A stretch of DNA of 57,968 nt, counting the filler, from Dugesia japonica (taxonomy: Eukaryota), in NCBI GenBank assembly GCA_001938525.1. It is 5 parts of 5 records of this genome, joined end to end, with 100 filler letters (N's around TTAATTAATTAA, not from the genome) between each part and the next. Parts side by side here need not be neighbours in the genome. Positions count along the whole stretch, not along the records: positions 18,497 to 35,403 come from MQRL01589739.1; 4 more parts are not named here. One strand, written 5' to 3'. The position numbers were made by a program, and so were the translations under genes. The notes beneath the pieces were generated by a model that saw nothing but the letters and a program-made list of their open reading frames with translations, was not told the origin of the DNA and did no database searches. Below, piece by piece: positions 18,497-35,403 of this stretch (position 1 is the first letter of the stretch; every line of letters starts with the position of its first letter).

Positions 18497-18913
18497 TTTA
18501 ATGAACATATGATGTTTCTAACATTTATTTATTTACTACATCTCTTCGTTCATCCTTCCAAATCCACTACGTTTTCTTCAATTTTGTTCTTCGTACGACA
18601 GCTACAGTCTTGAGAGTCACCAACACTGTGGATTCTCTCGGCGTATATCTAATAAATTTCGTCATCAACCGGTTTACACATGGGTCGTATACGCATCTAT
18701 ATAGATTCAGGATTTACTCCTCAAGGCTCTACAAACCCCGGGCACACATAGCCTATATATTTTTATATATGAGTGGTTTACTATAAAAGTTTTTAATAGT
18801 TAAGCATACGTAATTTGATTGGTTCTTTTTTTTGGTATATGTATGTAATTGTTATATTATATAAATTTCTTATATATAAACATTTACTATAAAAAATAAT
18901 AACATGAGTCATA

Positions 18914-19594
18914 CTAAATTTTTATATTTAGAAAAACACGATTAAGCATGTCAATTTTTACTTTTTTGAATTCTTCAACATAATGATTTAAATTAACATT
19001 AACATCTAAAGATATTTCATAAGAACATGGTATATATATGCATCTATTTAAAATGGCTTCTTTTGCACTAGATACATATGTCCAGATAGGTAAATTACCA
19101 CACACAATAAATGGCATAGATTTGAGAGGAACCCTAGGCCCATGTTTAACTCCGACACGGAAAAATGGAGAGTTCTCTATTAATTGTTTGAAATAATCGG
19201 CGTTTTTTGCATCAAGTGTTACCTCTTCACCAATTCCTATTTGTTTGTTAATGAGATTATCGAAGCAAAATTCAGACTGCATATGAATTAGAGAAAATGA
19301 TTCAGTGTCTAGCCCAGCACTAAATATCTTCATGAAAAGGGACTTACCGGCATTAGATGCCCCATCAAGTAAGATACAAGTAGTTTTGCCGGATTGTAGC
19401 AATAATACAAGGCCAATTGCACAGATACGATAATGGAGGGGATTAGATGCTTCCGTAAAACCGAGATTGTGTTTTTGAATAAAATTATCAATAATGTGAA
19501 CAAATTGCTTATTAAAATAAAAATGATTATTACTAATAAAATCTTGCAAAAATTTAGAAAGCGGCTCATAAACGATAAATTTATTAAAATCCAT
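18914..19594 (-). CDS. SF3 helicase, parvovirus NS1 / papillomavirus E1-like helicase domain
   Basis: Walker A CILLDGASNAGKS, FCFDNLINK, Walker B IGIGEE, B' FKQL..RVGVKH, motif C PFIVCGN and Arg finger EAILNRC. Intact 226-aa frame. Confidence 0.88.
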   Translation of the reverse strand: MDFNKFIVYEPLSKFLQDFISNNHFYFNKQFVHIIDNFIQKHNLGFTEASNPLHYRICAIGLVLLLQSGKTTCILLDGASNAGKSLFMKIFSAGLDTESFSLIHMQSEFCFDNLINKQIGIGEEVTLDAKNADYFKQLIENSPFFRVGVKHGPRVPLKSMPFIVCGNLPIWTYVSSAKEAILNRCIYIPCSYEISLDVNVNLNHYVEEFKKVKIDMLNRVFLNIKI

Positions 19595-19905
19595 TAAATG
19601 ATGAATAAACTAAAAATTGTTTATTATGTAACTAAACTACAATTAATACAACAAAATTGGGCCAATCACTAGAGTCTAAATTAAAAACTATCGTCATATT
19701 TCTTGACATTAGAGTATATACTAAGTGAGAGTTGATTATGGCACTGGGGACACTATGCGTCCATATCCACGGGAAGATGTTGATTTCCATTGGTTTTTTG
19801 GAGCAGGTGAGTAGTACGTTCCTTTACTTGGCTCATCTGAAGTCTGTACGGATTGTCTAATTTCTTCTGCTTACGCTAAAAAATAAAATTTTAATTTTGT
19901 ACATA

Positions 19906-20979
19906 TTAATTATTATATATTACTGGAATAATATCCATTTTAAAGTATAATAAATCGTTTAAGTAATGAATTTGTAATCTCCTATCCAGAGCTTCTTTAG
20001 TACAATTTAAAATATCGTATGGGTATAGCATTGATACATCATTAGTACATATTATGCGTGGCATTCTTTTAGGTATGCGTGCAGTACTATATTTTATGTC
20101 TACCACACTATCGTATTCGCAATCGTATAAATGTATAAGCTCTGTTATAGGCCATTTACGAAAATCTATATCGTCTATTACAATGCCATTATTGTTTTCA
20201 GTAATTAAATTAAATGATTGCCTGTTTGTTATTAGTACCGGTTTTGTACAATGTGCTAAAGCAAATGAGGTTTTGCCAATACCTGATGCAACTACAAATA
20301 CATGTGTGATGTCATCATATACATAAAAAAATGGATGCTTAAATTTAGTGTATTGTGGTTGAATTATTTCACCATTTTCCGATTTAAGATTTTCTAAAAT
20401 ACACTTTTTTTGTGTTACATATGTGAATGGATCTTGTTTTTTAAGTAATTCAATGGCTTCATTCATATTATTACAATTAAGGATATTATTCCATGCCATT
20501 TTTATTATATTTAAGTTTACTAGGTGTGCTAAAACTAAAACGAAGACCTCCGTGAACTCTTGTAGTGGGTTTGGTCACATAATCTCGAATACNNNNNNNN
20601 NNNNNNNNNNNNNNNNNNNNNNNNNNNNNNNNNATTAATCTATTTCTGGCGACCGAAAAATGAACTGACTTCTTAAATTCAATATACAGTTGTAAATGGC
20701 GGAAGCCTGATACTGACATCTCTTCTTGACCGATGAGATACTGCAATCCACTTTGTTTAAACAGTTCTCAATATCGATCAACATTGTCATGATATTGCTT
20801 ATACGATAGTGATACATGCCAATTTCTATGGCGAGAGTTGGGGGAGCATTTAAATTGGAGAATTGATTGTATGTCTGGGTACACATTATTCGAGCAGTTT
20901 CATTTTCTGAGTCCAATTTTCTGTTGGTACTAGAATCAGTACCGTCTCTAGTTCGTCCAATAGATGACACATTTGACAA
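19906..20979 (-). pseudogene. rep: CRESS-DNA-virus Rep (HUH endonuclease + SF3 helicase), copy 1, disrupted
   Basis: Motif I-like RHRNWHVSL (~20805-20835), motif II GQEE..SGFRHLQLYIEF, motif III RDYVTKPTTR, Walker A (V)ASGIGKTS, Walker B GIVIDD, DIKYSTARIP, motif C IICTN and ALDRR. One TGA at ~20768 and frameshifts at ~20495 and ~20880. Confidence 0.92.
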
Positions 20980-21064
20980 CGGCGAAACACTTCGGATATT
21001 TTCGTCGGGGTTGTATAATGGGACCTAATGCTCTTTGACCTATAGCAAATTACATTCCAATAAA

Positions 21065-21298
21065 TTAATTTATTACGAATAAAATAATACTACTTGATAA
21101 TAATTCTTGTATGGTGTTGGTAACACTATGACTTCCCGATTGCTTGGATTCACATTTTGTAGAGTTGTGTCTGCGTCGCTTAACGGGGGTCATCATATTG
21201 GTTATGAATTGATTTTCCTGTAGAACATTGTTTTGTTGATATGGTGGTGTGCGTATTCTCTCTAATAATTCTGATATAAAATGCAAATGAGATAGCAT
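21065..21298 (-). CDS. Short ORF with NLS-like TPVKRRRH; possible first exon of Rep copy 1
   Basis: Directly upstream of Rep1 on the same strand. Rep2 has a comparable low-complexity N-terminus with TPPKR. A GT..AG ~52-nt intron candidate lies at ~21025-21076. Confidence 0.35.
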   Translation of the reverse strand: MLSHLHFISELLERIRTPPYQQNNVLQENQFITNMMTPVKRRRHNSTKCESKQSGSHSVTNTIQELLSSSIILFVIN

Positions 21299-21314
21299 AA
21301 AATTTCAGTTAAAA

Positions 21315-22488
21315 ATGAAACGATTTCTAAAAACTGGATTTAAGTATAACAGACTATTGGATGACGTGGTGCCTGAGAAGAAAATTAAATTCTCTAAAAA
21401 TCAATTCAAATACACCAAACTTAATAATGAAGGTGATTCACACAGAAGACCTGGTGTGCCTATAATTGATAAATCTAATGGACTGAGTAATATTATCGAA
21501 GAAAAACTTATCAATCCAATAACAAATAAAATGAATATTAATACACCCAATCGTAAATTTGTATCTAAATGGAGTGATAGAGCAAAAAATTTAATTCCAA
21601 AATACAAAGCTACTAAAAAATTTGCACACAACCAAGAAGCTAATTTCTACACTGGTAATCATGTAGCATACGAGGGTGAATTTTTGTGGACCTGGCACAC
21701 GAATGGAATGGAGAGTAGATGAAAACAAGAAACCACTGCCTGTTAACAGTATAGACGAAGCGTGTTTAGCACATGATATAGATTATTCATCGAAAAAATT
21801 AACTGACAGACATGAGTCAGATTTGCGATTATTAGAGAATTTAGATTATATTGATGATGATAATCCAAAATTAACTTTAGAAAAGGAATTTGTTAGAAAA
21901 GTATTTCAATTAAAAATAATTGCTGAAAAACCGTTTTATATTTATAAAAAATGGCAAGAGGTTAAACACAATACTTCTTTCTGGGATTTCTTATTAGATT
22001 ATGTATTAAACAATGTTTTTAATTATTATTATGATCAATTTTTTGATAAAAATGGTAATAAGTTTAACCAGCTTATAGAAAAACAACATTTACAGACTAA
22101 AAGGGAGGAATTGTGGAATAATTACTCTCCAATGTCTCTAATAAGCAATTTCTTAATTAAATTATTTATGAAATATATTTATCCACATATAAAGGGGTTT
22201 ATGTTTTGGGTATTTGGAAAAAAAGAAGAGCATGATTTATTAAATAAACCGATGCATATTAAAGATACATTTGTGGGTTTTATAACTAAAAATATTAAGA
22301 ATGTGACTTTTTTGATCCCAGACATTAAAAAACGGAATATTGAATTTCTGAAAGTAACTCGTTGTTACACCAAATTCATTTTCGAGATTTTCGTTAATCA
22401 CTTTCCTTTTACACAAATATACTTCTGGGAAATTTGTTTTTATAATATTAATAGCCTCATTTTTATTATTTGCGTTGAGAGCATTTGA
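21315..22488 (+). CDS. Viral protein with parvovirus VP1u/adintovirus-type phospholipase A2 domain (frameshift at ~21676)
   Basis: NFCGPGT (Ca-binding loop) ... PVNSIDEACLAHDIDY (catalytic HD, DxxxxxHDxxY) ... RHESDLRLL. The basic N-terminal ORF 21315-21722 joins through one frameshift. Confidence 0.88.
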
Positions 22489-23099
22489 CCAAGCATTTTT
22501 TTTAGTTTTTGTTGGTTTAATATCATCATCAAAGCAATTAATACTTGGTAATCCGTATGAAACGGGCAATGTGCCAGTCATTCGTGTTTGGATTTTCGAA
22601 CAATACAATATCACAAATTTTTTGTCTTCTTTTGGCACTGGTTTCACGAACGGCACGCCCAACAAATCTTTCGCCCGATTGAAAGAAACTGCATTTTTGA
22701 ACTCACAATAGGCCTGTATATGTTTGTAACCGCCATCAAACACTGAAAATATATAACATATGTAATTATACTCATTACATACCTTAAATATTTACCTTCT
22801 TTCTGATATAAAATGTATTTGCAATTGGTTTTCCATAAGTTCACAAAATACTCTTCCTTTGTTGTAAATTTTCCCAACGGAAAGTTAAACGTGTAATTGT
22901 GGTGCCGTTTATTTTCTACATCTGGCACATTTGTGGTAGATTTAGCTGGGATTTCATCAGAATGTATTCTTTTGGGTGGTGTAGAGCTGCCATCACCAAT
23001 ATCCACATTGACTCTCTTTGTGGTGGAAGGATTACTTGTAGTAGATCCTCTAGATGACTTTATCGAGTTTTCATCATTTTTGTTGTCAAGGTCAGCCAT
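22240..23099 (-). CDS. rep: CRESS Rep copy 2 (spliced: exons 23099-22796 and 22742-22240), HUH domain intact, helicase absent
   Basis: RHHNYTFNF (I), YQKE|VFDGGYKHIQAYCEFK (II, after removing the 53-nt intron), LYCSKIQTR (III), then AWSNALN..EAINIIK..ENL aligning to Rep1. Similarity stops just before Walker A. Confidence 0.85.
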
Positions 23100-23114
23100 A
23101 TATTGTAGTGTTGA

Positions 23115-23567
23115 TTGAATATAGTGCCATTGAATATGGATGATAATTATCCATATTTTAATAATAGAAAAAGAATGGAATTTAAAATTATGAAAGAATA
23201 TTATCTAGCTGATAATGATTATGAAAAGAGGGATCAAAATATAATCGATAAATGGGGTTATTCGTACAATAGATATTATGATGCTTTTATATATGTAGGT
23301 AATAAAGATAATGAATTACCTAAGAAATTTTCTACTTCCAGAAAATTATTATCGAGATGGAAATTGGTTAATAAANATTATCCTAATGACCCCACAGAGG
23401 ATTTTTTTGATACTATTTATAATACAAAATATATTAATTACGCTAATGATAATGTACATCAAAGTATATTCTCCGGTGCAACTGGTATTAATATGAGAGA
23501 AATGTTTGGTATTAAAAAAGGTCTGGATTATTTATTTCCGAATGAAAATTATCGGTTCTTCTTTTAA
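23115..23567 (+). CDS. Orphan Y/N/D-rich ORF of the virus-like island (possible structural protein fragment)
   Basis: 150-aa open frame (first ATG at 23136) in very AT-rich DNA, divergent from Rep2. No recognisable motif. Confidence 0.45.
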   Translation: MNIVPLNMDDNYPYFNNRKRMEFKIMKEYYLADNDYEKRDQNIIDKWGYSYNRYYDAFIYVGNKDNELPKKFSTSRKLLSRWKLVNKXYPNDPTEDFFDTIYNTKYINYANDNVHQSIFSGATGINMREMFGIKKGLDYLFPNENYRFFF

Positions 23568-24779
23568 CGGAATTATCCTGGTCTCTGATTTAATATTTAG
23601 AATTCATTTTCAGTTGTTAAATAATATCCAGGAGCACGATCATCTTTAAAACTCATATCACTCGGATAATTTATAAATAAATTTAAATTTACTTTCTATT
23701 TCGGATAATAGTAACTGGAATAATATCAATCAAATAAAATTTTTGACCAATATAAACGGTGAGTGTAATCAAATTTTGTAAAATTATAACAAATTTCAAA
23801 AATAATTGGAGTAAAACTGAGCTCCTGGAAGCTCGTTTGTAAACTCTCCCGACTGACAAGTGATTAATTGACAAGTGATTTATAAAATCAAAAGTGATTT
23901 ATCAAATCGCGAAATACTAACAAAAGAAATCTGTAACTCGTTACAACTTAGAATTCGAACCAAGAAAATTATTGGTTGCNACTGTGAAATTTAAGTAATA
24001 CCCATGAGGGTAATAACGATGAATATTAAAATTAATTGCAATAATAATGATAGTAACCATGGCAATAAAATAATTTAGCCACAGTAATAACCATTATAAC
24101 TATAATATCAAGACGGAGTTATTTCAGGATCATTGTAAGAAATAGCTCATATATTACAAAATTTTTTAAAATTTTAGAGTATATTAAAATTATTATAGCA
24201 TATTAAAATTTATTCTTAAAATTTGTTAGTATGTGTTTTTAATTCAAATTTAATTAAATGGATTAAGATTGAAATTTAAAATTATTGAATATATATTAAT
24301 AAAATGTTTAAAAAATCATTTTCATAATTCAAATAGTAGCGTTGTCAATTAGGTCAGGTCTACATACCCATCAGAACAAAATAACACAAATCTTATCTAA
24401 CACTAATACACAAAGTATCTGTTATACTTATATTATTCACACCTGAACTAACTCTTTAATAGATAATGACCAGAAATCTTCTTTATTCTTTAATCAATTT
24501 TTAAAAATATTTATCGCAAATAATTATAATACATAATATTTAGGAAAAGTAATTTCGCTATTTGAGTATAAAAATCCAAATCGAAAAGTCATAATGAAAA
24601 ATTTTAACTAATCAAAATAATTACCATTTGCATTTACCACATTTTACTAACGTTCTAAGCGTTATTAATATTGCCTTTAAAGAAGTCAAAGTCGTGGGAT
24701 TCGATAAAAGAAGCAAATGCTTTTTTGAAATAATCTTGATTATTGAACTTATTATTTATTAGGAAATTGTCAAATGATA

Positions 24780-25515
24780 AGAAAAGATGGATATCTATTA
24801 TCTCGGGAGTAATGTGGGGTAAGTAAAGTTGCGTAACACAGCTCCTGTTATTTTTCGAGCGTTAATTTGGCGACATGTAGTCGAGTATTAGGGATTTGCT
24901 AATGCTGCTAGATTTTGATCCAGTTTTAAGTGATAAGCGTCGAGTTAACAAACAGATTACGATGTGATATTTTTTCCAGCTCCAAAGAAATAATTAATTA
25001 AATTAAAATAAACCATATTATAGACTGAAAGCATCTTGGTCCAATCACTCGCCAGTACATCTGGAATTGTCGAATAATACCCATTTCTCACCACAAGTAT
25101 GATTTTTTAAGGAGATCCTCATTTCTGTTTCTTAACAATTAAGATGAGCAAAACGATAGGCGATAAAATTTGATTTTCGCTTTATTTATGAGGGATCCAT
25201 TTTTGCAGTTTTGTAATTTTCCAATTTGTTGCAGGCAGTTATATTGTCTACACCGAGTATCTCTGAAACTGGTTGAGGGCTGGACTCGATAAGGGCTTTT
25301 AAACATTTATGTTCATTGCAGGTGGTCGTCATAATCGATCTTCATCTTAAACTCTTGGGTTTCGAGAACGAAATTTCCTGTTTGAACGCTGACCATCTCG
25401 TTTTCTAATTGAATACCTCCCGCACTTTTAACAAATATTTCACACAACCTTTGATGCATTTCTTTTCAATTTATATTCATACAATTGGCATGCTTGAATT
25501 TGCTTCGTAATCATG
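24780..25515 (-). mobile_element. mariner transposase remnant
   Basis: Fragments RKFRS..DEDR..RPP, WIPHK.SENQ, TCGEKWVLFDN and PHYS.D in mariner order. Confidence 0.75.
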
Positions 25516-25769
25516 GTTTGGTATAACGGGTTATTTATTATTTAAATTAGACTTTAACCTAGGAAAAGGTGAGTTAACTACAAAAATTCCAGAATTCTTT
25601 CCGAAACCTTCTCTTATTTCATAATTATATAACTAATGTTACTCAAAGAATCACTTTTGTCAAAATACAAAGGATAAATAATTTTGAACCCGAGCCCTAT
25701 GATTTTCAAGTATTTTTGAGGCCGAACCTAAAATTAAATATAAAAATTATTCGGTTTTTATTTATATAA

Positions 25770-26567
25770 AAGTTGAATATTTTCTCAAAAAATAATTTTA
25801 AAATAATTATCTCTATCAATTATTTATGCTGGAAATATTTCAAAAAAGATAACAATGAAAAAGCCAATTATAAGATTTATCTTAAAGAAATATCACACAA
25901 AGCATCTTCAATGACATTCTTACACTGTCACCTTGAGCATGTACATTCANTGAAGGTAATTCTAAACGATAATGAAATACTTGCAAAATTATTTAAAGAA
26001 AATATTGAAACTTTAAAAATAGATGCATTTTTAAAATCAGATGGTTTATCAATTTGACAAAATATGTAATTGTGAATTTATATCTGATATCTTAAAGACA
26101 TTAAAATTCATAATTTCAAAGAAGCTAGAGATATTATGAAAATTATACAACTTTATTACGATCAAGTAAAAACAACTAATATTCAAAATATCAAAAGCAA
26201 TCGATTAAAAAAAATCCAAGAATTAGTATATCAATTTTCTGAGTGGACAAGTTTAAGAAATCGAAGATTTTTGAATGTCCACATTTATTACAACGATTTA
26301 AGATAATTTAGAATTAATTCGGTTTAAATGTAGCTGCCAAATTGAAACTGCAATTCAATGACTTAAGAACGGTTTGGATAATATCAATGCATCATTTTTC
26401 ATATTTATTTTAAATCTCTGTTTTNAAAAATCAGGAAAATGAGAAATATCAATTTTAACTATTAATTTATTTTTTAGTATATTAGATTTCTCGAAAATTC
26501 TTGAGTATAACATTTTTATTTTTCATTTTCTCGAGAACGATAATCCATCGAGAAATACGCAACACTA
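25770..26567 (+). mobile_element. hAT-type transposase remnant with ..CAACACTA terminus
   Basis: BED-finger tail STxxL..HL..VH-like (SSMTFLHCHLEHVH), xEWTSLRNRRFLNVH (DEWTS first catalytic Asp region), and end CGAGAAATACGCAACACTA. A related end lies at ~27570-27613. Confidence 0.55.
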
Positions 26568-26596
26568 ATTATAATAAACGAAACTGAAAATTATTA

Positions 26597-27229
26597 CACA
26601 ATACAAACAATCATTTAAAATCAAATAGACTCATTATAATAATTACTTAGATGAATATATCAACCATAATTGGTAGGCAACTCCTGTTGATACTAAATTT
26701 CCTGTATTGCATTCAATTAAATTAATAAAAAATATTCCACCATTTTTCAAAAATTCACTAACAATTTTTTTCATAGCTGTTGTATCTAATATTTGAATAT
26801 CTTTTTTTTGTCTAAAATAATTTCACTCGAATAATCCAGATGAAAATTAAGATTAATTGTGATAATGAGACAATGATCAATCCAATCCAATCCAATAAAA
26901 ATAATTTCTTATTAATCATTTTGTCACTGTAGTAGATGCTACTACGTCCAAGAACTCACCAACTCATAAGTTTCAATTGGGAATGAGTAGGAAATATAAG
27001 CTTGAAAAAGTCCAAAATAATAAAATTACTGATAAATTGATGTTGAACATGAAATGCAACATATTTGAGTCTCACACATCATCAATGATACTAGGAATTT
27101 CTTTCATAGTCAGAAAATGTATATGCATTTGGTATCAACAGGAGTTGCGTACCAATTATGGTTGATATATTTTTTTAACTAATCATTATTATAATGAATC
27201 AATTTGTTAAAAAAAATGATTGTATTGTG
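26597..27229. mobile_element. MITE-like element with ~100-bp imperfect terminal inverted repeats
   Basis: ATATATCAACCATAATTGGTAGGCAACTCCTGTTGATAC (26655-26693) is the near-exact inverse of GTATCAACAGGAGTTGCGTACCAATTATGGTTGATATAT (27132-27170). Homology extends outward to CACAATAC / GTATTGTG. Confidence 0.8.
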
Positions 27230-27719
27230 TTTTATATTTGTATTTCAAAGGAATATTTTTCAAAAATAAATTGTAAAATGAACAATTAATTAATGTTATT
27301 GTTTAAAAATACTTTTATAAGAAATGTAATATTAGGTTTTATTATATACATTTAATATATTTAAAATTACTATTATTCATTTAATAATTTTTTATAGCGG
27401 GATAACGGTTACAGAGTTACTAAAACATTCTCTTAAAAGTCGAAAATGAAAAATTAAATTCATTTTTTAAACAATTTGAAAGTGTATTCTATTAAAATCA
27501 ATGCAATAAATTGTAAAATTCATTTTAATAATAATTAGTTGAACGAATATATCATCCATAGGATTTTATTTCTCATTTTCTAGAAATAATCAATCGAGAA
27601 ATGAACAATACTAATTCAAACTAATTTTTTTATTTATTGTTTTATACATTTTACTAGTTATATTATAATTACAATACAAGTCACGAAACCAGAGAATAAA
27701 AATTCTTCTATTTGTAATT

Positions 27720-27960
27720 ATTTTATCCAAAATGACAATAAAAATGTCGTCTTTTGTAACGAATGTGGGCACAAATTTGTTTGCGCAAAAGAAAACACCT
27801 CAACCATTCGTCGACATTTTTTTATGTCCGTACCATCGACAAGGGTGAACATGATAACTAATTAAAGAACGTTTAAATAATTGATGCTTTTTAGTTAAAA
27901 TTTCAGTTGATAAAACAGTTTCAAAATTAGCTGTAATTGATAGATTTTATTCGTCATTCA
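27720..27960 (+). mobile_element. BED zinc-finger (hAT transposase N-terminus) remnant
   Basis: VFCNECGHKFVCAKENTSTIRRH; VSKLAVID. Confidence 0.55.
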
Positions 27961-30849
27961 TCATCAATAGTCATGATGCTACCATCAAGTTTAAACTGTA
28001 TTGTTTCCTATTGATTAATTTAATCGAGCATCAAATGTTTAGGGTTTTACAAACCCGTAGGCTAATACAGTAACCTTTTGCTTAAAATTATGCATATTAA
28101 TTAATTACAATACCAATTCAAGAATAAAGATTCATTACAATTATTAACTATTTAACAAATCTCTTCAATAAAAATACTTAAAAGAAGTATTTGGATTCAC
28201 AGTAGACTTTCCAAAAAGAAGATCAGAATAATTTTTGAAAACAGATTTACAACTCACAAATTCACATAATTAAAAAATTTTACGTTCAACAAAAAAATTT
28301 CAGTATACACCAGAGCCTCGAGTTGCGTCGTTAATATGTTCCAAAGAAAACACGGCGCAATTCGAATTGTAATGTTATATACATATTTTTATATAATTGG
28401 TTTCGATGAAATCTATATATGTTTAAATGAAAAAAATTATTGGCAATAATAAATTTCATTAAAGCCACTACACCATGAATGAAATTTTATTTTAAAGAAA
28501 TAATATTTCATAAAATATAATTTATAATGAACATAAATTTATAGATTTCATTAAAATAAGATAAGGCTTCGATCAAAACAAAACAAAATTTATTTGAAAA
28601 AAAAGTTCAAATTTTCGACAATAGTCTTCTTTCGATCAATGGTTAAGTCCAAGAATTATTCTCACAATAATTGTAATTATAAATTTATAGAATTTATTCA
28701 GAGTCTAATTTGTAAGTTTCAATCAGATTTAGGTTATTTTTCTCTTCAATAAAATTATGAAGTGTCAATATAATAGCATTTTAGCCAAATAATTTTTTTA
28801 ACAGCTTAAATAAGTATATACAGCTTGTGCTTTTTAACTACCTTTGCACTTCGATTAGCATCTGTATCCCAGCACGAAATATTTCTAATGCTTCAGATAT
28901 TAATTTAATTGCTGAACGTTAAGTTTTTTATTTCTGGTACTTCTAGGAAATTGTCATCATAGTCGTAAATATTTTGATACATTTCAATAAAATCTGCGGC
29001 GCTGACATTTAAAATCTCGTAGAAATCTACTCTGCTGAATCCATCGAAATGAGTTGTTTGAGTTAAATTAACTATTTCTGGTCATATTTTTCTTCACACC
29101 ATTTATACATGAGAATTTTCCTCCACATACCGTTTATACATGATAATTTTGCTTCTGCTCAAGAATCACGCTTTCAATAAATTGTAGTTTTTCCCAAATT
29201 GTGCCCTAGTTTTTTCTTTATCCACGTCGGTAGCTTGTAATAGTCTGTAGAATATAATAAGATTTAAAATTTGAAATTATTCCTTGATATATTGGTTGAA
29301 TTTTTGAAGTTGTGTTTATAGATAAATAAAAATTTGACATCATCTGATAGGAACTTATCTTCAAAATATTCCATATTTCAAAATCGATTAATTAAGGCTT
29401 AATTTTAAAAATCAAAGTTAATTGGTTATTAGGATCACCTAAACAAATAACTCAATAATTAAAAAGTTTTAATAATTATAAAAATTAATTTTCAAATAAA
29501 TTTCCTAAATTGCCAACGATAAAGTGAAAAACTTGCTTAATATTAAATGAATATAAATTAGATTTTACAAATAAATGTTTTTTTTATAAATATTGTTATA
29601 AAAATTGACAAATGAGTAAGTTTGTTAAAAGTTATTTGATTAGAATTTGTAATTAGTATTTAGTGAACGAAATTATTTATCTAGAATAAAATATTAATTT
29701 CTGTTCATCTGTTCATTATTAATTTATATTAATATTAATTTTAATTTCTGTTCATCAAAAGAATTTATTGTAAATTNNNNNNNNNNNNNNNNNNNNNNNN
29801 NNNNNNNNNNNNNNNNNNNNNNNNNNNNNNNNNNNNNNNNNNNNNNNNNNNNNNNNNNNNNNNNNNNNNNNNNNNNNNNNNNNNNNNNNNNNNNNNNNNN
29901 NNNNNNNNNNNNNNNNNNNNNNNNNNNNNNNNNNNNNNNNNNNNNNNNNNNNNNNNNNNNNNNNNNNNNNNNNNNNNNNNNNNNNNNNNNNNNNNNNNNN
30001 NNNNNNNNNNNNNNNNNNNNNNNNNNNNNNNNNNNNNNNNNNNNNNNNNNNNNNNNAAATATATTTCTTATTTACACTTAACATTTAAACCAATCTTCAA
30101 GTTTACTTATTTAACAGTTTCCAATTTATGATAAGCAAATAATAATACTGGGTTGTAATATAAATTTTCGTGATTTTTTAATAAAAATTTTAAACATTCA
30201 AAATTTTAAAAAAATAAGTTAATCAGTAATGCAATCTCCGCTATTAATTGTGACTTATTTTCACCTTTCCAATACGCGATCGATACAATTACATTGGAAT
30301 TTAATAAGACCGGACTCGAAGAATTTGTTGAGTCACTTTGTTTATATCTTTGTCACTGTATAAGGTAATTGACAACATATGTTTAGACAGTGAACGCAAG
30401 GCGATTATCATGAAACTCCTAGCGACCATTGTTATTGTTTTAGGATTAGGGGAAATTAATTACTAATATAATTGCAACTATCCACCCTAAATTTAAGCAT
30501 CTCATCATCGAAGGATAGTACTATGCCTATTTTATTTTCAATATTTTTCTATTTTTTAACTATACAAAACTAAATTAATAATTTTCTGCTTGTGATGCCG
30601 TGTTATAGAAGAAGACTGATAATTACCAACTTTTATTAAAAACAAAAACTGCGCTTTTTATTCGTTATGTTAAAACAACAATTTATTCAATAATAAAATG
30701 TTTTATATATATTCATTTTAAATTGTAATAAATAGATATATTTATATGTGAGAGTGATTCTAAAATAACAGGAAAAATTACATAAAGCGCAATAACTGTA
30801 AATAATATTTTTCTTTTCAGTGTATAAACTTTCTACATCAAGACACTTT

Positions 30850-31200
30850 TGCATCCGATGTTGCTACTTTTCTAAACCTTCCCTGTAAAAATCAGTATCA
30901 GAATGTTGATTTGAACCAATACAGAGCTGCTTTGGTTGCATAATATATACATTCACACATAATTAATTCAGTTGGAATAAAAAATAATCACATGTAGCTA
31001 AATCTAAACTATCGAGTAGATGACAAAATTTCCCATCTAAATTTCACCAAGACACACCTTGATCGACGTGATGCATGTGCTGGCCCATTTTCATAATGGA
31101 AAATGATCTGCTGATTGATATTATTCCGTATTGCAGGCCTCAATTTTTGCAACACTGTTAAGTAATATATACTTTTTGCCATTCATTAATGATTTGTTCA
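30850..31200 (-). mobile_element. mariner transposase C-terminal remnant
   Basis: RPAIRNN..IIFHYENGPAH and DLATCDYFLF. Confidence 0.7.
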
Positions 31201-31655
31201 TTACTCCATTCAAGTTTAACCAATAATTTGATATTTGCACGAATTTCAACACGCAAATTTTACATTTAAAAAAGTAGGCTTTCGAAAAAAACAATCATCA
31301 TCACGAAATTTATAGACAAAATTTTTATATATTATAATTTCAAAAAATTTATAAGCTTTAATAATTAGATTGCTACTCTAAGAATGACTACTCCATTCCT
31401 GTTAGTCTTTGACTAACTCGCACGCACACACATCGATTATGTTTAGAAAAATTCTTGTTAGCGTTTGAATATTTAAATCATAAAAACTAAATGAATCCAT
31501 AAAAGTTTATTTAAAGCCCTAAGATAAATGAATAAAAACTATTATTTAAACAAATTTACTTTTATTCGTTTTCTGAATTTTATTTAAATTAATTTTTAAA
31601 AAATCAATTAGTTCTTAAAACAAGATTATTAAAAAAATAATAGATATCCGTATAA

Positions 31656-32340
31656 CAGTGGTTTTCAAACTTTTTGCTCAGCCTCCTTCAAAAACGATAG
31701 AAAAATCACTTAACCGCAGTTTTTATTATCATAGCAAAACATTAAATTTATCCTGCCAATCATTTCAATGATAACAAGACATATCCATCATCTAATAATA
31801 ATATATGTTTAAGAAAATTTGTTTTTTATTAATAATAGTTTCATAAATTTTTATCATTTCAGGGTATTCATTTAATACAATTATTAAATACTGTCAAAAT
31901 CTCACAATAACAAGATAATGCAAACATTTTTACTTAGTATAATCAAATGTTACTCTGTAATTAGCCTTTACTCCATGATTCTAATGAGATGTGAGCTANC
32001 CTTTTTGAACAAGAAAAATGTATTCTTGGTGAGATTTTGGATATACACTCGAATGTCATCTTCAACATAAAAACTTGATCTGAATTTTCACTTAATCACA
32101 ACCAAATTAGTTTTATCGCGTTGTTAGTAATCTTTTGTGAAAAATTTATTTGTAATTGTATAAGTGTTCAGTATATATTTTTGATGCAATAATAATCAAC
32201 TTTTTTTAACGAGATTTTTAGTATGTTCTAATATTGGTTTTGCATCGATTTTAATTTATTAATATTAACAAGAATTTATTAATAAAATGACGTTTTTCCC
32301 AGAAACGCAAATAAACTAAAATTTGAGGATTATTAATCAG
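31656..32340 (-). mobile_element. hAT Buster/Charlie-like element 3' end
   Basis: TIR CAGTGGTTTTCAAACTTTTT at 31656. The minus-strand C-terminus RSSFYVEDDIRV..SKISPRI..AHISH* resembles the Buster/ZBED5-type RxRLxVExDLR..H.SH end. Confidence 0.65.
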
Positions 32341-34149
32341 TGGTTTTTTAAGGCACTATTGCATTTACTTGTTTTTCTTAGAAATGGTTGCTAACCAAAT
32401 ATGGTTTGCATTCGTATCTGCATATTCTTTGCAATTCCTTGTATGAAAGTCCACAATTTAGCTCGGCTGTATTGTTTAGCAGTTATTCTTGGTCGCTTTA
32501 ATGAAAAATCATGTTTTTCTGCAACTTCAGATACAGCACCATACAACTTCTTAAATTCAGCATCTGCTTCTGCTCTTATATATCTGGTTTTAATTCATCC
32601 AATCCAATCTCAAAATAGTTATTAATATCTGGACAAATAAGTGAATGTTAGAAAGTTCGGAAATAATATTTTCAAAATCATACATTTCTTCTATTAACAA
32701 TTCCAATTGAGAGATTTTTGATGAATTTCCATTGTTAATATTTTGTAACAAAATAAAATGAAATACAGCTTGGAATTGAAAGTCAACCTTTTACAGGCTC
32801 TTAGTTACGTATACTCCTGTTTTTTCTTGGAGAAAAATACTGGTTTTCATAATTAAATTTCATGTCAATTAGAATTTTTCGCAATATGGTTTTAATTGCA
32901 ACACAACATTTTCGTGATTATTTTCTGCGTGATTGAGCATATACGTGTTTACATTTATACTTTCCATTAACTTTTTAGATTTAATAGAAAACTGATAACA
33001 AAACTAAAATTTCAATCCATTTATATATTAATTTTTTTGTGTTAATTATTGTCCTCTAATTTTTCTAATTCAATTGTAATCTGTAACGTATTATAAATAT
33101 TATATTAAAAATTTTATTTCATAAATTATAAATATTTACTACTTACAAAGAATTGATAATAAACTAACATTCATTGAATCATATCTACTTAAATTGACAT
33201 TAAAGAATTATCAGAGATATAATTTTCATGGCAACCGAGCACATGTGACAGACATATTTTATTGACAACTCTGCCTTCAGTTTTTGAGTACTAATTGTAA
33301 TTTGTGACTACATAATATCTTTTCATTAATGTAAAGTTATTAACAAATGCTCTAATCAAAACTTTTTCATTAAAACAATTTGATTCTTTCAATATCTTCC
33401 AAATTTTCTCTAACCTTTTTAACATTGAAATTTTCTGTTAATAATAATTTAGTTCTAATTAATATTAAAAAAAATTATTTTATTGAATGATAAAAAAATA
33501 CTTAAGGCAATTCTAAATTTCGAATACTTAATTTATATTTACTTCAAAACAAACTTAGATTTACAAAAAAAATTCAATACTTAATTCTTTATCTTAAAAT
33601 TTAAAAAACTAAAAACTATAAAAAACATTTAAAAGTTCAAATTAACAAAACAGTATAAAATTCAAATTTGATTTTAGTAAATTTGTCATTAATTAGCAAT
33701 ATTATTAACTAGAATTTATTAGTATATGTATTTTTATTGGGGATGCATGTTATTTTGTCATTCTTGCTCAATAACACTTCACTTTTTCTTCTTTTTCTCA
33801 CTTATTCTTTTCGTATTCTCTATCTTTCGATTAGTATACTTTATTCTTGCACTTAAATTATATTACATCATTATACGAATTAATTTATTATAAAAATTCG
33901 AATATTTATATTCCTATATATTTCGAATTGTTATATTCCTATAGGATACAATCTGTAAATAACTGTAATAATTTTGCCTAATTTTTAAATTTATAATCTG
34001 AATATAATTATTAAATGATTGTTGAATTATTAAGGACAAATTATTGATAAATTTAAAGTAACAATATATAATTACTCTAATATTACATATATAACGCACC
34101 CGTTATAAAGATAAAAGACATTTTATTTAAAAAAGACATACTATCATTT

Positions 34150-34560
34150 AAAATTTTTATTTAAAAACATTTATTTAAGATAGGTTCCATTTGAAGCTAC
34201 GACCTTAGACCATTAATACAACTAACGAATTCCTAGAAAGAATTTTGACTCTTGAAGCAATCTAGCTATCCACTTAATTGAGCGAAACAAATGCTAATCC
34301 GAAGGAGTAATATCCGGGGGATATAGATTGTGATCTAAGACTTCCCAGTTTACTCATTAGTAGTTCTTAACAACCGAATGAACGCGTTTATCATGTTGCA
34401 AAAATATCTTGGTAATTTTGTTATTTTTTCTGAAAAAGCTCGCTTTAAACGAATAAATTGCAATCTATAGCATTTTCCCGTTATGGTTGTAACGAATTCA
34501 CCTGGCTTCACCGAGCTGCTTTGTGTTTTGGATTTTCATAATGTATCCATTTTTCGTTTC
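34150..34560 (-). mobile_element. mariner transposase remnant (internally deleted)
   Basis: KWIHYENPK, FLQHD and NWEVLDHNLYPPDITPSD.HLFRS. Confidence 0.75.
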
Positions 34561-35403
34561 TAGTCACAATTAGATACAAAAACATTTTCTTTGCTGTCAG
34601 TCAATCTATTTTATTTGATAATCGTCTAACATTTAGACATTTCTATAGAACTGACAGATTTGAAATGTTACTATATTATTATTTTCATTTTAGTTCATTT
34701 TAGTTCACAAAATTAGTTCCCTTCATTTTAGTTCACAAATGTTGGTAAATGTCAAATTTTGAATGAATCATAGACATATTAAAATAGTATCAGAACATTA
34801 ATTATTCTCACAAAACTTTATTTATGAACAAGACCACTGTCATTATCTTCAAATATCTAAATGCATCAACTATTTCTAATTTCACAAACATTTAATAAAA
34901 TGAGTAGTCTTGTTTCCTGTTCAACTCGATCTGATGAAAAATTCAAGTTACCTATGGATGAAATGCAGTTAATTTTAACTGGATACTTCGCCGAACTAAT
35001 AAACTGGATCTTAGGTTATTTTTGCCTCTTAACAGTATGAACAAAACTAGTATTAACAAATATGAAATTAGAAAAAAAATTAATTAGTGTAATATCTGCA
35101 CAATTACACATCAAATTTTCAATTTTACCACATTGATGAACGTAACCTGCTTCTCAAAAAATTTGTCTCAAATCATAAAATCCTTCTAAAGACGAGATGA
35201 TAGAACGCAGGGCCAGGGTTTCGGAACACTTTAAATTTAGTTATCCACAATGGACTGAGTATCACTGACATGTTTAATAGAAGAACTATCAAAGTCAGCA
35301 CTTAGATTGTTCATTGTGGAATTGATAGTTCACTATAGACGAATAGTTACAGACTCTAATATTCATATAAGTGAAAAATTCCTTATACTGAATGGATATT
35401 TTT

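What the first reader, a model, noticed from the sequence alone, without database searches (positions are those of the whole stretch)
18497..23600. Chimeric ssDNA-virus-like element: CRESS HUH Reps + separate NS1/E1-like SF3 helicase + parvo/adinto-type PLA2 in one 5-kb island
Seen: five tightly packed ORFs, in order SF3 helicase(-), Rep1(-), PLA2-ORF(+), Rep2(-), orphan(+), followed on the same scaffold by ordinary host TE debris, which suggests integration. Established: classified CRESS viruses (Cressdnaviricota) typically have one Rep with a built-in helicase and lack PLA2. The PLA2 domain belongs to parvovirus VP1u and to some Polintons/adintoviruses, and NS1-type helicases belong to linear Parvoviridae. 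From memory (needs verification), the planarian extrachromosomal element PEVE from Girardia tigrina was described with a circovirus-like Rep plus a second papillomavirus-E1-like helicase, which is the same pairing. Inference: this is an endogenised member of a poorly characterised or unclassified PEVE-like lineage bridging CRESS and parvo-like modules, here with an entry-type PLA2 gene.
Basis: partly seen in the sequence, partly recalled or inferred. Interest (0 to 1): 0.9.

Follow-up and report, generated by a model that had tools for sequence, protein, structure and literature searches.

The report
Integrated PEVE-like ssDNA virus element
About 5 kb of an AT-rich scaffold holds the partly broken genes of a little-known small DNA virus type first seen in a planarian, combining a circovirus-type replication gene, a separate parvovirus-type helicase and a parvovirus-type membrane-breaching enzyme.

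Summary
The coding island is real: it has 7 stop-free stretches of at least 130 aa, where 0.02 are expected by chance, and the 11.8-kb flank has none over 95 aa.

- **Helicase (18914-19594, minus strand):** intact, stand-alone, NS1/E1-type SF3. It passes Pfam's PPV_E1_C cutoff. An AlphaFold model (pLDDT 93) is closest to AAV Rep40/Rep68. A search of 1.84 billion proteins returned the 227-aa helicase of the planarian element PEVE as a named relative (33% identity, E 6e-21). The best hit overall is only 38% identical.
- **Rep1:** a CRESS-type Rep with its own SF3 domain (hhalign 87%, E 4e-6). It has two frame changes and contains the assembly gap.
- **Rep2:** a diverged paralogue of Rep1 (32-42% identity). 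It has one frame change and no helicase part.
- **PLA2 ORF:** passes Pfam's cutoff for the parvovirus-type domain.
- **Assembly gap:** its flanks share strand and frame, and the motif spacing matches Rep2.

The PEVE lead is confirmed for the helicase only. It is not shown that the PLA2 gene belongs to the same element, that the Reps match PEVE's Rep, or that the island is integrated. My verdict is a new, divergent member of the known PEVE/PIVE kind, of moderate interest.

The parts
18914..19594 (-). Stand-alone NS1/E1-type (Rep40-like) SF3 helicase gene, 226 aa, intact. The Pfam-matched core is 19082-19402.
   Evidence: PPV_E1_C 29.5 bits against cutoff 26.5. Best PDB sequence hit is papillomavirus E1, 1tue, E 8e-4. 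There are 227 relatives at E<=1e-3; the best is 38% identical and the PEVE helicase P0004 is 33% identical, E 6.3e-21. Walker A Gly/Lys, the Walker B Glu, the conserved Lys, the motif C Asn and the Arg finger are all kept. The AF2 model has pLDDT 92.9. Nearest folds are parvovirus, densovirus and bidnavirus NS1 helicases in BFVD, and AAV2 Rep40/Rep68, then E1, in PDB. No breaks.
19906..20979 (-). Rep1, a CRESS-type Rep with HUH nuclease, central domain and its own SF3 helicase. Broken gene, given as one part. Domains: HUH about 20489-20746 (contains the gap), central 20365-20493, SF3 19978-20301.
   Evidence: Viral_Rep E 1.6e-4, 22.3 bits, below cutoff 26. Gemini_AL1_M E 0.0075. SF3 domain by hhalign against the 50-sequence helicase alignment: probability 87%, E 4e-6, with Walker A Lys, Walker B Asp, Lys, motif C Asn and Arg aligned. 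Paralogous to Rep2. Breaks: 2 frame changes, one supported by Rep2 homology on both sides and one inferred only from ORF layout. No in-frame stops inside the matched stretches. One assembly gap. Motif I is not established.
20593..20633 (.). Assembly gap (41 N) inside the Rep1 HUH domain.
   Evidence: The flanks share strand and frame. Motif spacing equals that of Rep2 (39 residues) in an ungapped match. Not filled and not looked up.
21315..22488 (+). PLA2-bearing gene: an upstream basic ORF plus the PLA2 ORF, given as one part. The PLA2 domain is 21679-21915. The last roughly 250 nt run antisense to Rep2.
   Evidence: Phospholip_A2_4 E 6.3e-8, 33.2 bits against cutoff 23.9, profile positions 9-80 of 80. 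A glycine loop and a His-Asp pair can be read in the ORF. Breaks: 1 presumed frame change between the upstream ORF and the PLA2 ORF. Codon periodicity: upstream ORF p 1.6e-3, PLA2 domain p 1e-2, the part after the domain p 0.05. No relatives in the indexed protein search and no PDB hits. The single-sequence AF2 model is unusable, pLDDT 41. No capsid body recognised.
22240..23099 (-). Rep2, a diverged second CRESS-type Rep copy with HUH and central domains only. Broken and 3'-truncated gene, given as one part. Domains: HUH match 22654-22734, central 22342-22509.
   Evidence: Gemini_AL1_M E 9e-4 and Viral_Rep E 0.07. Identity to Rep1 is 42% in the central domain and 32% in the HUH domain, tblastn E about 1e-13. 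Breaks: 1 frame change. It coincides with the only phase-compatible short GT..AG intron candidate found (53 nt). That is expected by chance about 0.05 per zone and is not shared by Rep1. The SF3 part is missing: nothing matches Rep1's SF3 on the minus strand downstream.
23115..23567 (+). Orphan ORF, 150 aa, with one N. Probably real coding sequence of unknown function.
   Evidence: Strong codon periodicity, p 2e-6. No Pfam match. Two weak collinear matches to the PLA2 ORF, E 0.08 and 5.5, not significant.
21065..21298 (-). Small ORF in the region between the divergent Rep1 and PLA2 genes. Probably not a gene.
   Evidence: No Pfam match. No codon periodicity, p 0.78. The region does not fold better than shuffles, z -0.32.
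23568..35403 (.). AT-rich flank without recognisable genes, presumed host DNA. Contains a foldback or MITE-like inverted repeat at about 26495-27477 and a 280-N gap at 29777-30056.
   Evidence: No stop-free stretch over 95 aa. No transposon-related Pfam match for ten ORFs. No Rfam match. Inverted repeat with 66-nt arms, 88% complementary. No second copy of any island gene.

Best explanation
The island is a chromosomal, partly decayed copy of an ssDNA virus-like element of the PEVE/PIVE kind. It most likely consists of two diverged, incomplete genome units lying head to tail.
- Unit A (18914-22488) is ambisense: helicase and Rep1 on the minus strand, the PLA2 gene on the plus strand.
- Unit B (22240-23567) is a Rep2 fragment on the minus strand and the orphan ORF on the plus strand.

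**Inferred working of the free element**
- The CRESS-type Rep nicks the origin with its HUH/tyrosine centre, starts rolling-circle-type replication and unwinds DNA with its own SF3 domain.
- The separate Rep40-like helicase (helical bundle plus AAA+ core, no nuclease domain) acts as a second motor. By analogy with AAV Rep40/52 it would most likely load ssDNA into capsids; otherwise it is an auxiliary replicative helicase.
- The PLA2 domain sits on a virion protein and opens the endosomal membrane at entry.

**This copy:** both Rep genes are interrupted and Rep2 lacks its helicase part, so the locus is probably not autonomous. The helicase ORF and the PLA2 domain are still intact.

**Shown:** the gene identities, their order, the homology to the PEVE helicase and the Rep1/Rep2 paralogy.
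**Inferred:** that all genes come from one element, the two-unit origin, integration, and all functions.
For: - Helicase: Pfam above cutoff. PEVE helicase returned as a named relative, E 6.3e-21, same length class 222-244 aa. All catalytic positions kept. Model pLDDT 92.9 with AAV Rep40/Rep68, E1 and NS1 as nearest folds.
- Rep1 carries its own SF3 domain. So the locus has two SF3 helicases, as described for PEVE (my memory of Rebrikov 2002; the paper is not held).
- Rep1 lies between the helicase (312 nt away, same strand) and the divergent PLA2 gene. This layout is easier to explain by one ambisense genome than by separate insertions.
- Rep1 and Rep2 are diverged paralogues, 32-42% identical.
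- The PLA2 domain is above the Pfam cutoff.
- An integrated planarian relative of PEVE (PIVE) is on record (PMC3198968).
- The island runs without an N-run into 11.8 kb of non-coding AT-rich DNA, too much to belong to a genome of about 7.5 kb.
Against: - Only one gene, the helicase, is tied to PEVE, and at just 33% identity.
- The Reps and the PLA2 ORF found no relatives in the indexed protein searches or in PDB. Their Rep family matches are below Pfam's cutoffs.
- Co-location of these genes elsewhere was not tested, because I left out fetching DNA of relatives.
- The helicase relatives sit on short contigs of 1.1-4.3 kb, and the PEVE helicase record is 1911 nt. In relatives the helicase may therefore be on its own small molecule.
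- No origin stem-loop, terminal repeats or hairpins were found.
- No capsid body was recognised.
- The host is unidentified.
- The scaffold is a draft with gaps and single Ns.
Confidence: 0.6

Rival explanations
1. Two unrelated insertions landed side by side: a parvovirus-like element that gave the helicase and PLA2, and one or two CRESS viruses that gave Rep1 and Rep2.
For: The helicase and PLA2 are the two parvovirus hallmarks. Nearest folds and Pfam families are parvoviral. Parvovirus-like insertions are common in flatworm genomes (PMC10433990, PMC13055364). Classified CRESS viruses are not known to carry PLA2; only PLA1 is reported, in bacilladnaviruses (PMC11903649).
Against: Rep1 sits exactly between the helicase and the PLA2 gene without disrupting either. 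The helicase is a full-length stand-alone protein like PEVE's, not a truncated NS1. Its first residue aligns with those of its relatives, and the N-terminal bundle is modelled with high confidence. PEVE itself is described as pairing such a helicase with a circovirus-like Rep (from memory).
Confidence: 0.15
2. The locus is not a fossil. The frame changes are sequencing errors or introns of a draft assembly, and the element is an expressed, possibly multi-copy PIVE-like repeat or a co-opted gene set.
For: Every break is a frame change and none is an in-frame stop in the matched stretches. That pattern fits indel errors better than long neutral decay in AT-rich DNA. The draft has single Ns and gaps. 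One frame change coincides with a canonical 53-nt GT..AG candidate in the right phase. The helicase (226 aa), the Rep1 C-terminal part (197 aa) and the orphan ORF show strong codon periodicity. Liu et al. treat PIVE as a virus-like repeat (PMC3198968).
Against: Only 1 of 4 frame-change zones has an intron candidate. About 0.15-0.2 is expected by chance for at least one in four, and the candidate is not shared by Rep1. Rep2 lacks its helicase part altogether and overlaps the PLA2 ORF antisense. No second copy is present in the 16.9-kb piece. No terminal repeats were found.
Confidence: 0.15
3. Assembly artefact: episomal viral DNA, or reads of several variants, was collapsed or scaffolded onto host sequence, so the order and the link to the flank are not real.
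For: There is a gap inside Rep1 and the sequence is draft quality. Two diverged Rep copies and an abrupt Rep2/PLA2 overlap could come from mis-joined variants. PEVE is extrachromosomal (PMC3198968).
Against: The gap flanks fit one gene in strand, frame and spacing. The other gene junctions and the island-to-flank transition contain no N-run, only single Ns.
Confidence: 0.1

Closest known systems
[quoted passage not shown]
   Same: A stand-alone NS1/E1-type SF3 helicase of the same size (227 against 226 aa), homologous at E 6.3e-21. It is paired with a circovirus-like Rep that has its own helicase (the pairing is from memory of Rebrikov 2002).
   Different: Only 33% identity. Here the helicase is 312 nt downstream of Rep1 on one molecule, whereas the PEVE helicase record is a 1911-nt small segment (PMC3198968). 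Here the element is apparently chromosomal and broken. Whether PEVE has a PLA2 gene or a second Rep copy could not be checked. No flanking inverted repeats were found here.
PIVE (integrated virus-like element of Schmidtea mediterranea, Repbase 2008; described in PMC3198968)
   Same: An integrated, PEVE-related element in a very AT-rich animal genome, with an NS1/E1-type helicase.
   Different: No sequence comparison was possible, because Repbase is not among the tools. The host of this window is unknown.
AAV Rep40/Rep52 and parvovirus NS1 helicase domains
   Same: They are the best structural matches: 9bc5, 9rm5 and 1s9h, E 9e-9 to 7e-8, TM about 0.6. The helical bundle plus AAA+ core without a nuclease domain matches Rep40.
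   Different: Rep40 is made from an internal promoter of the larger Rep gene. Here the helicase is a separate gene next to a CRESS-type Rep. Identity is 16-18%.
Bidnaviridae stand-alone S3H (BmBDV VD1 ORF2)
   Same: A parvovirus-type SF3 helicase encoded as a stand-alone protein without the nuclease domain (PMC4061559). Bidnavirus NS proteins are among the BFVD hits.
   Different: Bidnaviruses replicate with a PolB and lack both an HUH Rep and PLA2 (PMC4061559). Here there is an HUH Rep and a PLA2, and no PolB.
Cressdnaviricota Reps (circovirus and geminivirus type)
   Same: An HUH motif, the catalytic tyrosine motif, a central domain and an SF3 domain in the usual order.
   Different: All family scores are below the Pfam cutoffs. 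There were no hits in PDB. No stem-loop origin was found. The Rep is accompanied by a second helicase and a PLA2 gene, which classified CRESS viruses lack (PMC11903649).
Parvovirus VP1 unique-region PLA2 (Pfam PF08398)
   Same: The domain match is above the curated cutoff and covers nearly the whole profile.
   Different: In parvoviruses the domain precedes a glycine-rich stretch and a jelly-roll capsid body (PMC4061559). Neither was recognised here, and the ORF runs into Rep2 antisense.

Membership tests
PEVE-like elements | A stand-alone NS1/E1-type SF3 helicase of about 227 aa, homologous to the PEVE helicase. | tested here: met
   P0004 is named as the PEVE helicase: E 6.3e-21, 33% identity, residues 18-203 against 22-207. 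The catalytic columns are kept.
PEVE-like elements | A circovirus-like Rep with its own helicase domain in the same element. | tested here: met
   Rep1 is next to the helicase. It has Viral_Rep and Gemini_AL1_M matches below cutoff and an SF3 domain by hhalign, 87%, E 4e-6.
PEVE-like elements | The Rep is homologous to PEVE's own Rep. | not tested
The indexed search with the Rep1 C-terminal part was blank.
PEVE-like elements | Unique regions flanked by inverted repeats (from memory of Rebrikov 2002). | tested here: inconclusive
   No inverted repeats bracket the island. However, only 417 nt remain left of the helicase before the edge of the piece.
PEVE-like elements | Extrachromosomal ss/ds DNA forms. 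| not testable with these tools
   This needs reads or DNA from the organism.
Cressdnaviricota (Rep) | An HUH motif and a catalytic tyrosine motif in the nuclease domain. | tested here: met
   Both motifs can be read in Rep1 and Rep2 at equal spacing. Partial Viral_Rep matches: E 1.6e-4 and 0.07, below cutoff 26 bits.
Cressdnaviricota (Rep) | Nuclease motif I. | tested here: inconclusive
   The upstream ORFs in another frame show no significant similarity to each other or to any family.
Cressdnaviricota (Rep) | An SF3 helicase fused to the C-terminus. | tested here: met
   Met in Rep1. Absent from Rep2.
Cressdnaviricota (Rep) | An origin stem-loop with a conserved nonanucleotide. | tested here: not met
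   The pattern occurs 8 times against 7.2 expected, and none lies in a stem-loop. No significant hairpins were found.
Cressdnaviricota (Rep) | A small circular genome. | not testable with these tools
   Only an apparently integrated copy is available.
Parvoviridae | An SF3 helicase of the NS1/Rep40 type. | tested here: met
Parvoviridae | The helicase is fused to an N-terminal HUH nuclease in one NS1 protein. | tested here: not met
   The ORF is full length relative to its 222-244-aa relatives, and residues 3-64 are modelled as a helical bundle.
Parvoviridae | A PLA2 domain at the N-terminus of a jelly-roll capsid protein. | tested here: inconclusive
   The PLA2 domain is met. No capsid body was recognised, and the model is unusable at pLDDT 41.
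Parvoviridae | Terminal hairpins on a linear genome. | tested here: inconclusive
   None were found, but the left end is cut by the edge of the piece.
Bidnaviridae | A protein-primed PolB. | tested here: not met
   No island or flank ORF matched a polymerase family.

The most novel reading that the evidence does not exclude
All the island's genes come from one ssDNA virus lineage, sampled so far only by PEVE. Its genome would unite a Cressdnaviricota-type Rep, a Rep40/NS1-type stand-alone helicase and a parvovirus-type PLA2 structural gene. That would make it a natural link or recombinant between CRESS viruses and the parvovirus stock. The near-intact ORFs would also mean members were active recently.
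Probability: 0.4. Interest if true: 0.75.

Novelty: new member of a known kind. Interest (0 to 1): 0.55.

Why it matters
PEVE has stayed an unclassified curiosity since 2002. A second, very divergent relative shows that the lineage is broader than one planarian strain: the best protein match among 1.84 billion representatives is 38% identical. It also gives a locus where a CRESS-type Rep, a parvovirus-type helicase and a parvovirus-type PLA2 lie within 3.6 kb.

If the three genes belong to one genome, the lineage bears directly on how parvovirus-like viruses and CRESS viruses exchanged replication and entry modules. It would also be, to my knowledge, the first PLA2 found next to a CRESS-type Rep. 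If they do not belong together, this is an ordinary cluster of viral insertions.

Tried and rejected
- **Indexed protein searches:** blank for the helicase ORF, the PLA2 ORF and the Rep1 C-terminal part. The exhaustive HMMER search later showed the helicase does have relatives, so these blanks reflect the word index, not absence.
- **Exact look-up of the helicase ORF:** not on record.
- **PDB sequence searches with Rep1, Rep2 and the PLA2 ORF:** nothing meaningful.
- **Single-sequence AF2 model of the PLA2 ORF:** pLDDT 41. I did not use it for fold search.
- **Origin search:** the nonanucleotide pattern is at chance level. Short inverted repeats and folding of both intergenic regions are at chance level.
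- **Terminal or inverted repeats around the island:** none.
- **Intron model for the frame changes:** a scan of both strands with fixed criteria gave a phase-compatible candidate in 1 of 4 zones. This is not above chance after multiple testing and is not shared by Rep1. Homopolymer runs in the zones were uninformative.
- **Rep N-terminal pieces compared with each other:** not significant.
- **Orphan ORF against the PLA2 gene pieces:** not significant.
- **Flank ORFs against Pfam, and Rfam on the whole piece:** no transposon or RNA family found.
- **PEVE paper:** not held in the library. The supplements of Liu 2011 hold nothing on PEVE or PIVE.
- **Rep1+Rep2 alignment as a search profile:** considered and rejected, because it would amount to a joined full-length Rep.

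Full report
**Scope and rules.** I worked only on 18497-35403. I did not fill the N stretches or look up their letters. Broken genes are described by counts of breaks only.

- An early script printed per-frame match bounds between the two Rep copies. I also narrowed one frame-change zone by coordinates in my reasoning before applying the rule. Later scripts printed counts only.

- The piece has about 28% G+C.
- The first 5.1 kb holds 7 stop-free stretches of at least 130 aa. Markov-1 simulations give 0.02 on average, with a longest stretch of 92 +/- 16 aa.
- The remaining 11.8 kb has nothing above 95 aa.
- Codon-position periodicity is strong for the helicase ORF (p 1e-6), the Rep1 C-terminal part (6e-5) and the orphan ORF (2e-6). 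It is moderate for the other pieces. It is absent for the small ORF at 21065-21298 (p 0.78).

**2. The assembly gap.** It lies inside the Rep1 nuclease domain.
- The flanks are on the same strand.
- With 41 N as written, they are in the same frame.
- The distance from the HUH motif to the catalytic tyrosine motif is 39 residues, exactly as in Rep2, and the match to Rep2 across the gap is ungapped.
- This fits continuity. It is not proof, because the gap length is only an estimate.

**3. The helicase (18914-19594, minus strand).**
- Pfam: PPV_E1_C at 29.5 bits, above the 26.5 cutoff.
- Best PDB sequence hit: papillomavirus E1, E 8e-4.
- The indexed search was blank. The exhaustive HMMER search of 1.84 billion representatives found 227 relatives at E<=1e-3 and 18 at E<=1e-10.
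- The closest relatives are proteins of 222-244 aa. The best is 38% identical.
[quoted passage not shown] The other relatives carry no informative name and come from Logan, ENA, JGI or NCBI assemblies on contigs of 1.1-4.3 kb.
- The relatives hit PPV_E1_C and Parvo_NS1 about equally.
- In alignments of 12 and 50 sequences the window protein keeps the conserved Walker A glycines and lysine, the Walker B glutamate, the conserved lysine, the motif C asparagine and the arginine finger.
- The AlphaFold model built on the 50-sequence alignment has pLDDT 92.9. It shows a three-helix N-terminal bundle and an AAA+ core.
- In BFVD the top 50 matches are almost all named parvovirus, densovirus or bidnavirus non-structural proteins. 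Three are unnamed, and one of those is a 227-aa protein at rank 3.
- In PDB, AAV2 Rep68/Rep40 comes first (E 9e-9), followed by papillomavirus E1 and B19 NS1.
- The gene is therefore an intact, stand-alone, Rep40-like SF3 helicase.

**4. The Reps.**
- Rep1's C-terminal part (197 aa) has a weak geminivirus-type central-domain match.
- It also aligns with the 50-sequence helicase profile at 87% probability, E 4e-6. The alignment runs from Walker A to the arginine finger with the key residues in register (a weaker result with 12 sequences is).
- The piece that spans the gap matches the circovirus-type Viral_Rep family: E 1.6e-4, 22.3 bits, below the 26-bit cutoff.
- Rep2 gives the same two families in the same order (E 0.07 and 9e-4).
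- Rep2 matches Rep1 at 32% in the nuclease domain and 42% in the central domain (tblastn E about 1e-13).
- Rep2 stops where the Walker A motif should be. Nothing on the minus strand downstream matches Rep1's helicase.
- Break counts for Rep1: two frame changes, one bracketed by Rep2 homology and one inferred from layout only; no in-frame stop within the matched stretches; one assembly gap.
- Break counts for Rep2: one frame change and loss of the SF3 part.
- Motif I could not be established in either copy.
- PDB and indexed searches were blank.

**5. Are the frame changes introns?**
- I scanned both strands of the whole piece with fixed generic criteria for short GT..AG introns.
- One of four frame-change zones, in Rep2, holds a phase-compatible candidate of 53 nt.
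- From the measured site densities I expect about 0.05 per zone by chance, or 0.15-0.2 for at least one in four. Rep1 is uninterrupted at the homologous place.
- The model therefore stays open. I searched the exons separately and left out the joined step.
- All breaks are frame changes and none is a stop, in a draft with single Ns. So sequencing errors are a live alternative.

**6. The PLA2 gene.**
- The 270-aa ORF matches the parvovirus-type PLA2 family over profile positions 9-80 of 80: E 6e-8, 33.2 bits against a 23.9 cutoff.
- A glycine loop and a His-Asp pair can be read in the expected order.
- The open frame begins three codons before the match. A basic 135-aa ORF in another frame overlaps its start. 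I count this as one presumed frame change.
- Nothing after the domain is recognisable.
- The last roughly 250 nt run antisense to the homology-supported part of Rep2.
- I read this as a junction between two truncated units rather than as a true gene overlap.

**7. Surroundings.**
- No nonanucleotide stem-loop, terminal repeat or significant hairpin was found.
- The flank has no recognisable gene, TE domain or RNA family.
- It contains a foldback or MITE-like inverted repeat and a 280-N gap.
- No island gene has a second copy in the piece.
- The host is not identified. The only named relative is from a planarian.

**8. Interpretation.**
- The locus has the two-helicase make-up reported for PEVE. 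That description is from my memory of Rebrikov et al. 2002; the paper is not held.
- Liu et al. 2011 (PMC3198968) record an integrated relative, PIVE, in Schmidtea mediterranea. They note that its helicase groups with the PEVE small segment and with parvoviruses.
- Rep1 is sandwiched between the helicase and the divergent PLA2 gene. This favours one ambisense genome (unit A) over separate insertions.
- Rep2 plus the orphan ORF look like a second, diverged, truncated unit. The orphan ORF shows two weak collinear matches to the PLA2 ORF, which are not significant.
- Stand-alone parvovirus-type helicases are known in bidnaviruses, which lack both Rep and PLA2 (PMC4061559).
- Among CRESS viruses only a PLA1 has been reported (PMC11903649).
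- So a PLA2 next to a CRESS-type Rep would be unusual, if both belong to one genome.

**Verdict.** This is a real, divergent, probably chromosomal and partly broken PEVE/PIVE-like element, a new member of a known kind. Confidence in the single-lineage reading is about 0.6. Interest is 0.55.

Noticed in passing
window 26495-27477: Nested inverted repeats form a foldback or MITE-like structure of about 1 kb. The best arms are 26633-26698 and 27127-27192 (66 nt, 88% complementary).
   Followed up: partly
window 24957-25459: A patch richer in G+C (0.35) holds four short minus-strand ORFs in different frames, with no Pfam match. It may be a decayed gene fragment.
   Followed up: partly
window 31009-31182 (minus strand): A short ORF looks transposase-like by eye only, with no Pfam match.
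   Followed up: partly
window 29086-30056: A 280-N assembly gap lies next to two short tandem arrays with periods of 31 and 25 nt.
   Followed up: no
window 23115-23567 compared with 21676-22488: The orphan ORF has strong codon periodicity and two weak collinear matches to the PLA2 ORF (E 0.08 and 5.5). It may be a diverged paralogue, but the matches are not significant.
   Followed up: partly
proteins P0001-P0018 (relatives of the helicase): The closest helicase relatives are all small stand-alone proteins on short contigs of 1.1-4.3 kb, and the PEVE helicase record is 1911 nt. This hints that in free relatives the helicase sits on its own small molecule.
   Followed up: no
window 19595-19905: The 312-nt spacer between Rep1 and the helicase is richer in G+C than its surroundings. 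It holds a polyadenylation-like hexamer shortly before the helicase start. It does not fold better than chance (z -0.58).
   Followed up: partly
window 20976-21014: A small hairpin (8-bp stem, 12-nt loop) lies in the divergent Rep1/PLA2 intergenic region. It has no canonical nonanucleotide and cannot be told from chance.
   Followed up: partly
window 20747-20979 and 22900-23099 (minus strand): Both Rep copies are preceded by a Ser/Thr-rich, basic N-terminal ORF stretch of about 60 aa. The architecture is similar, but there is no significant sequence similarity.
   Followed up: partly
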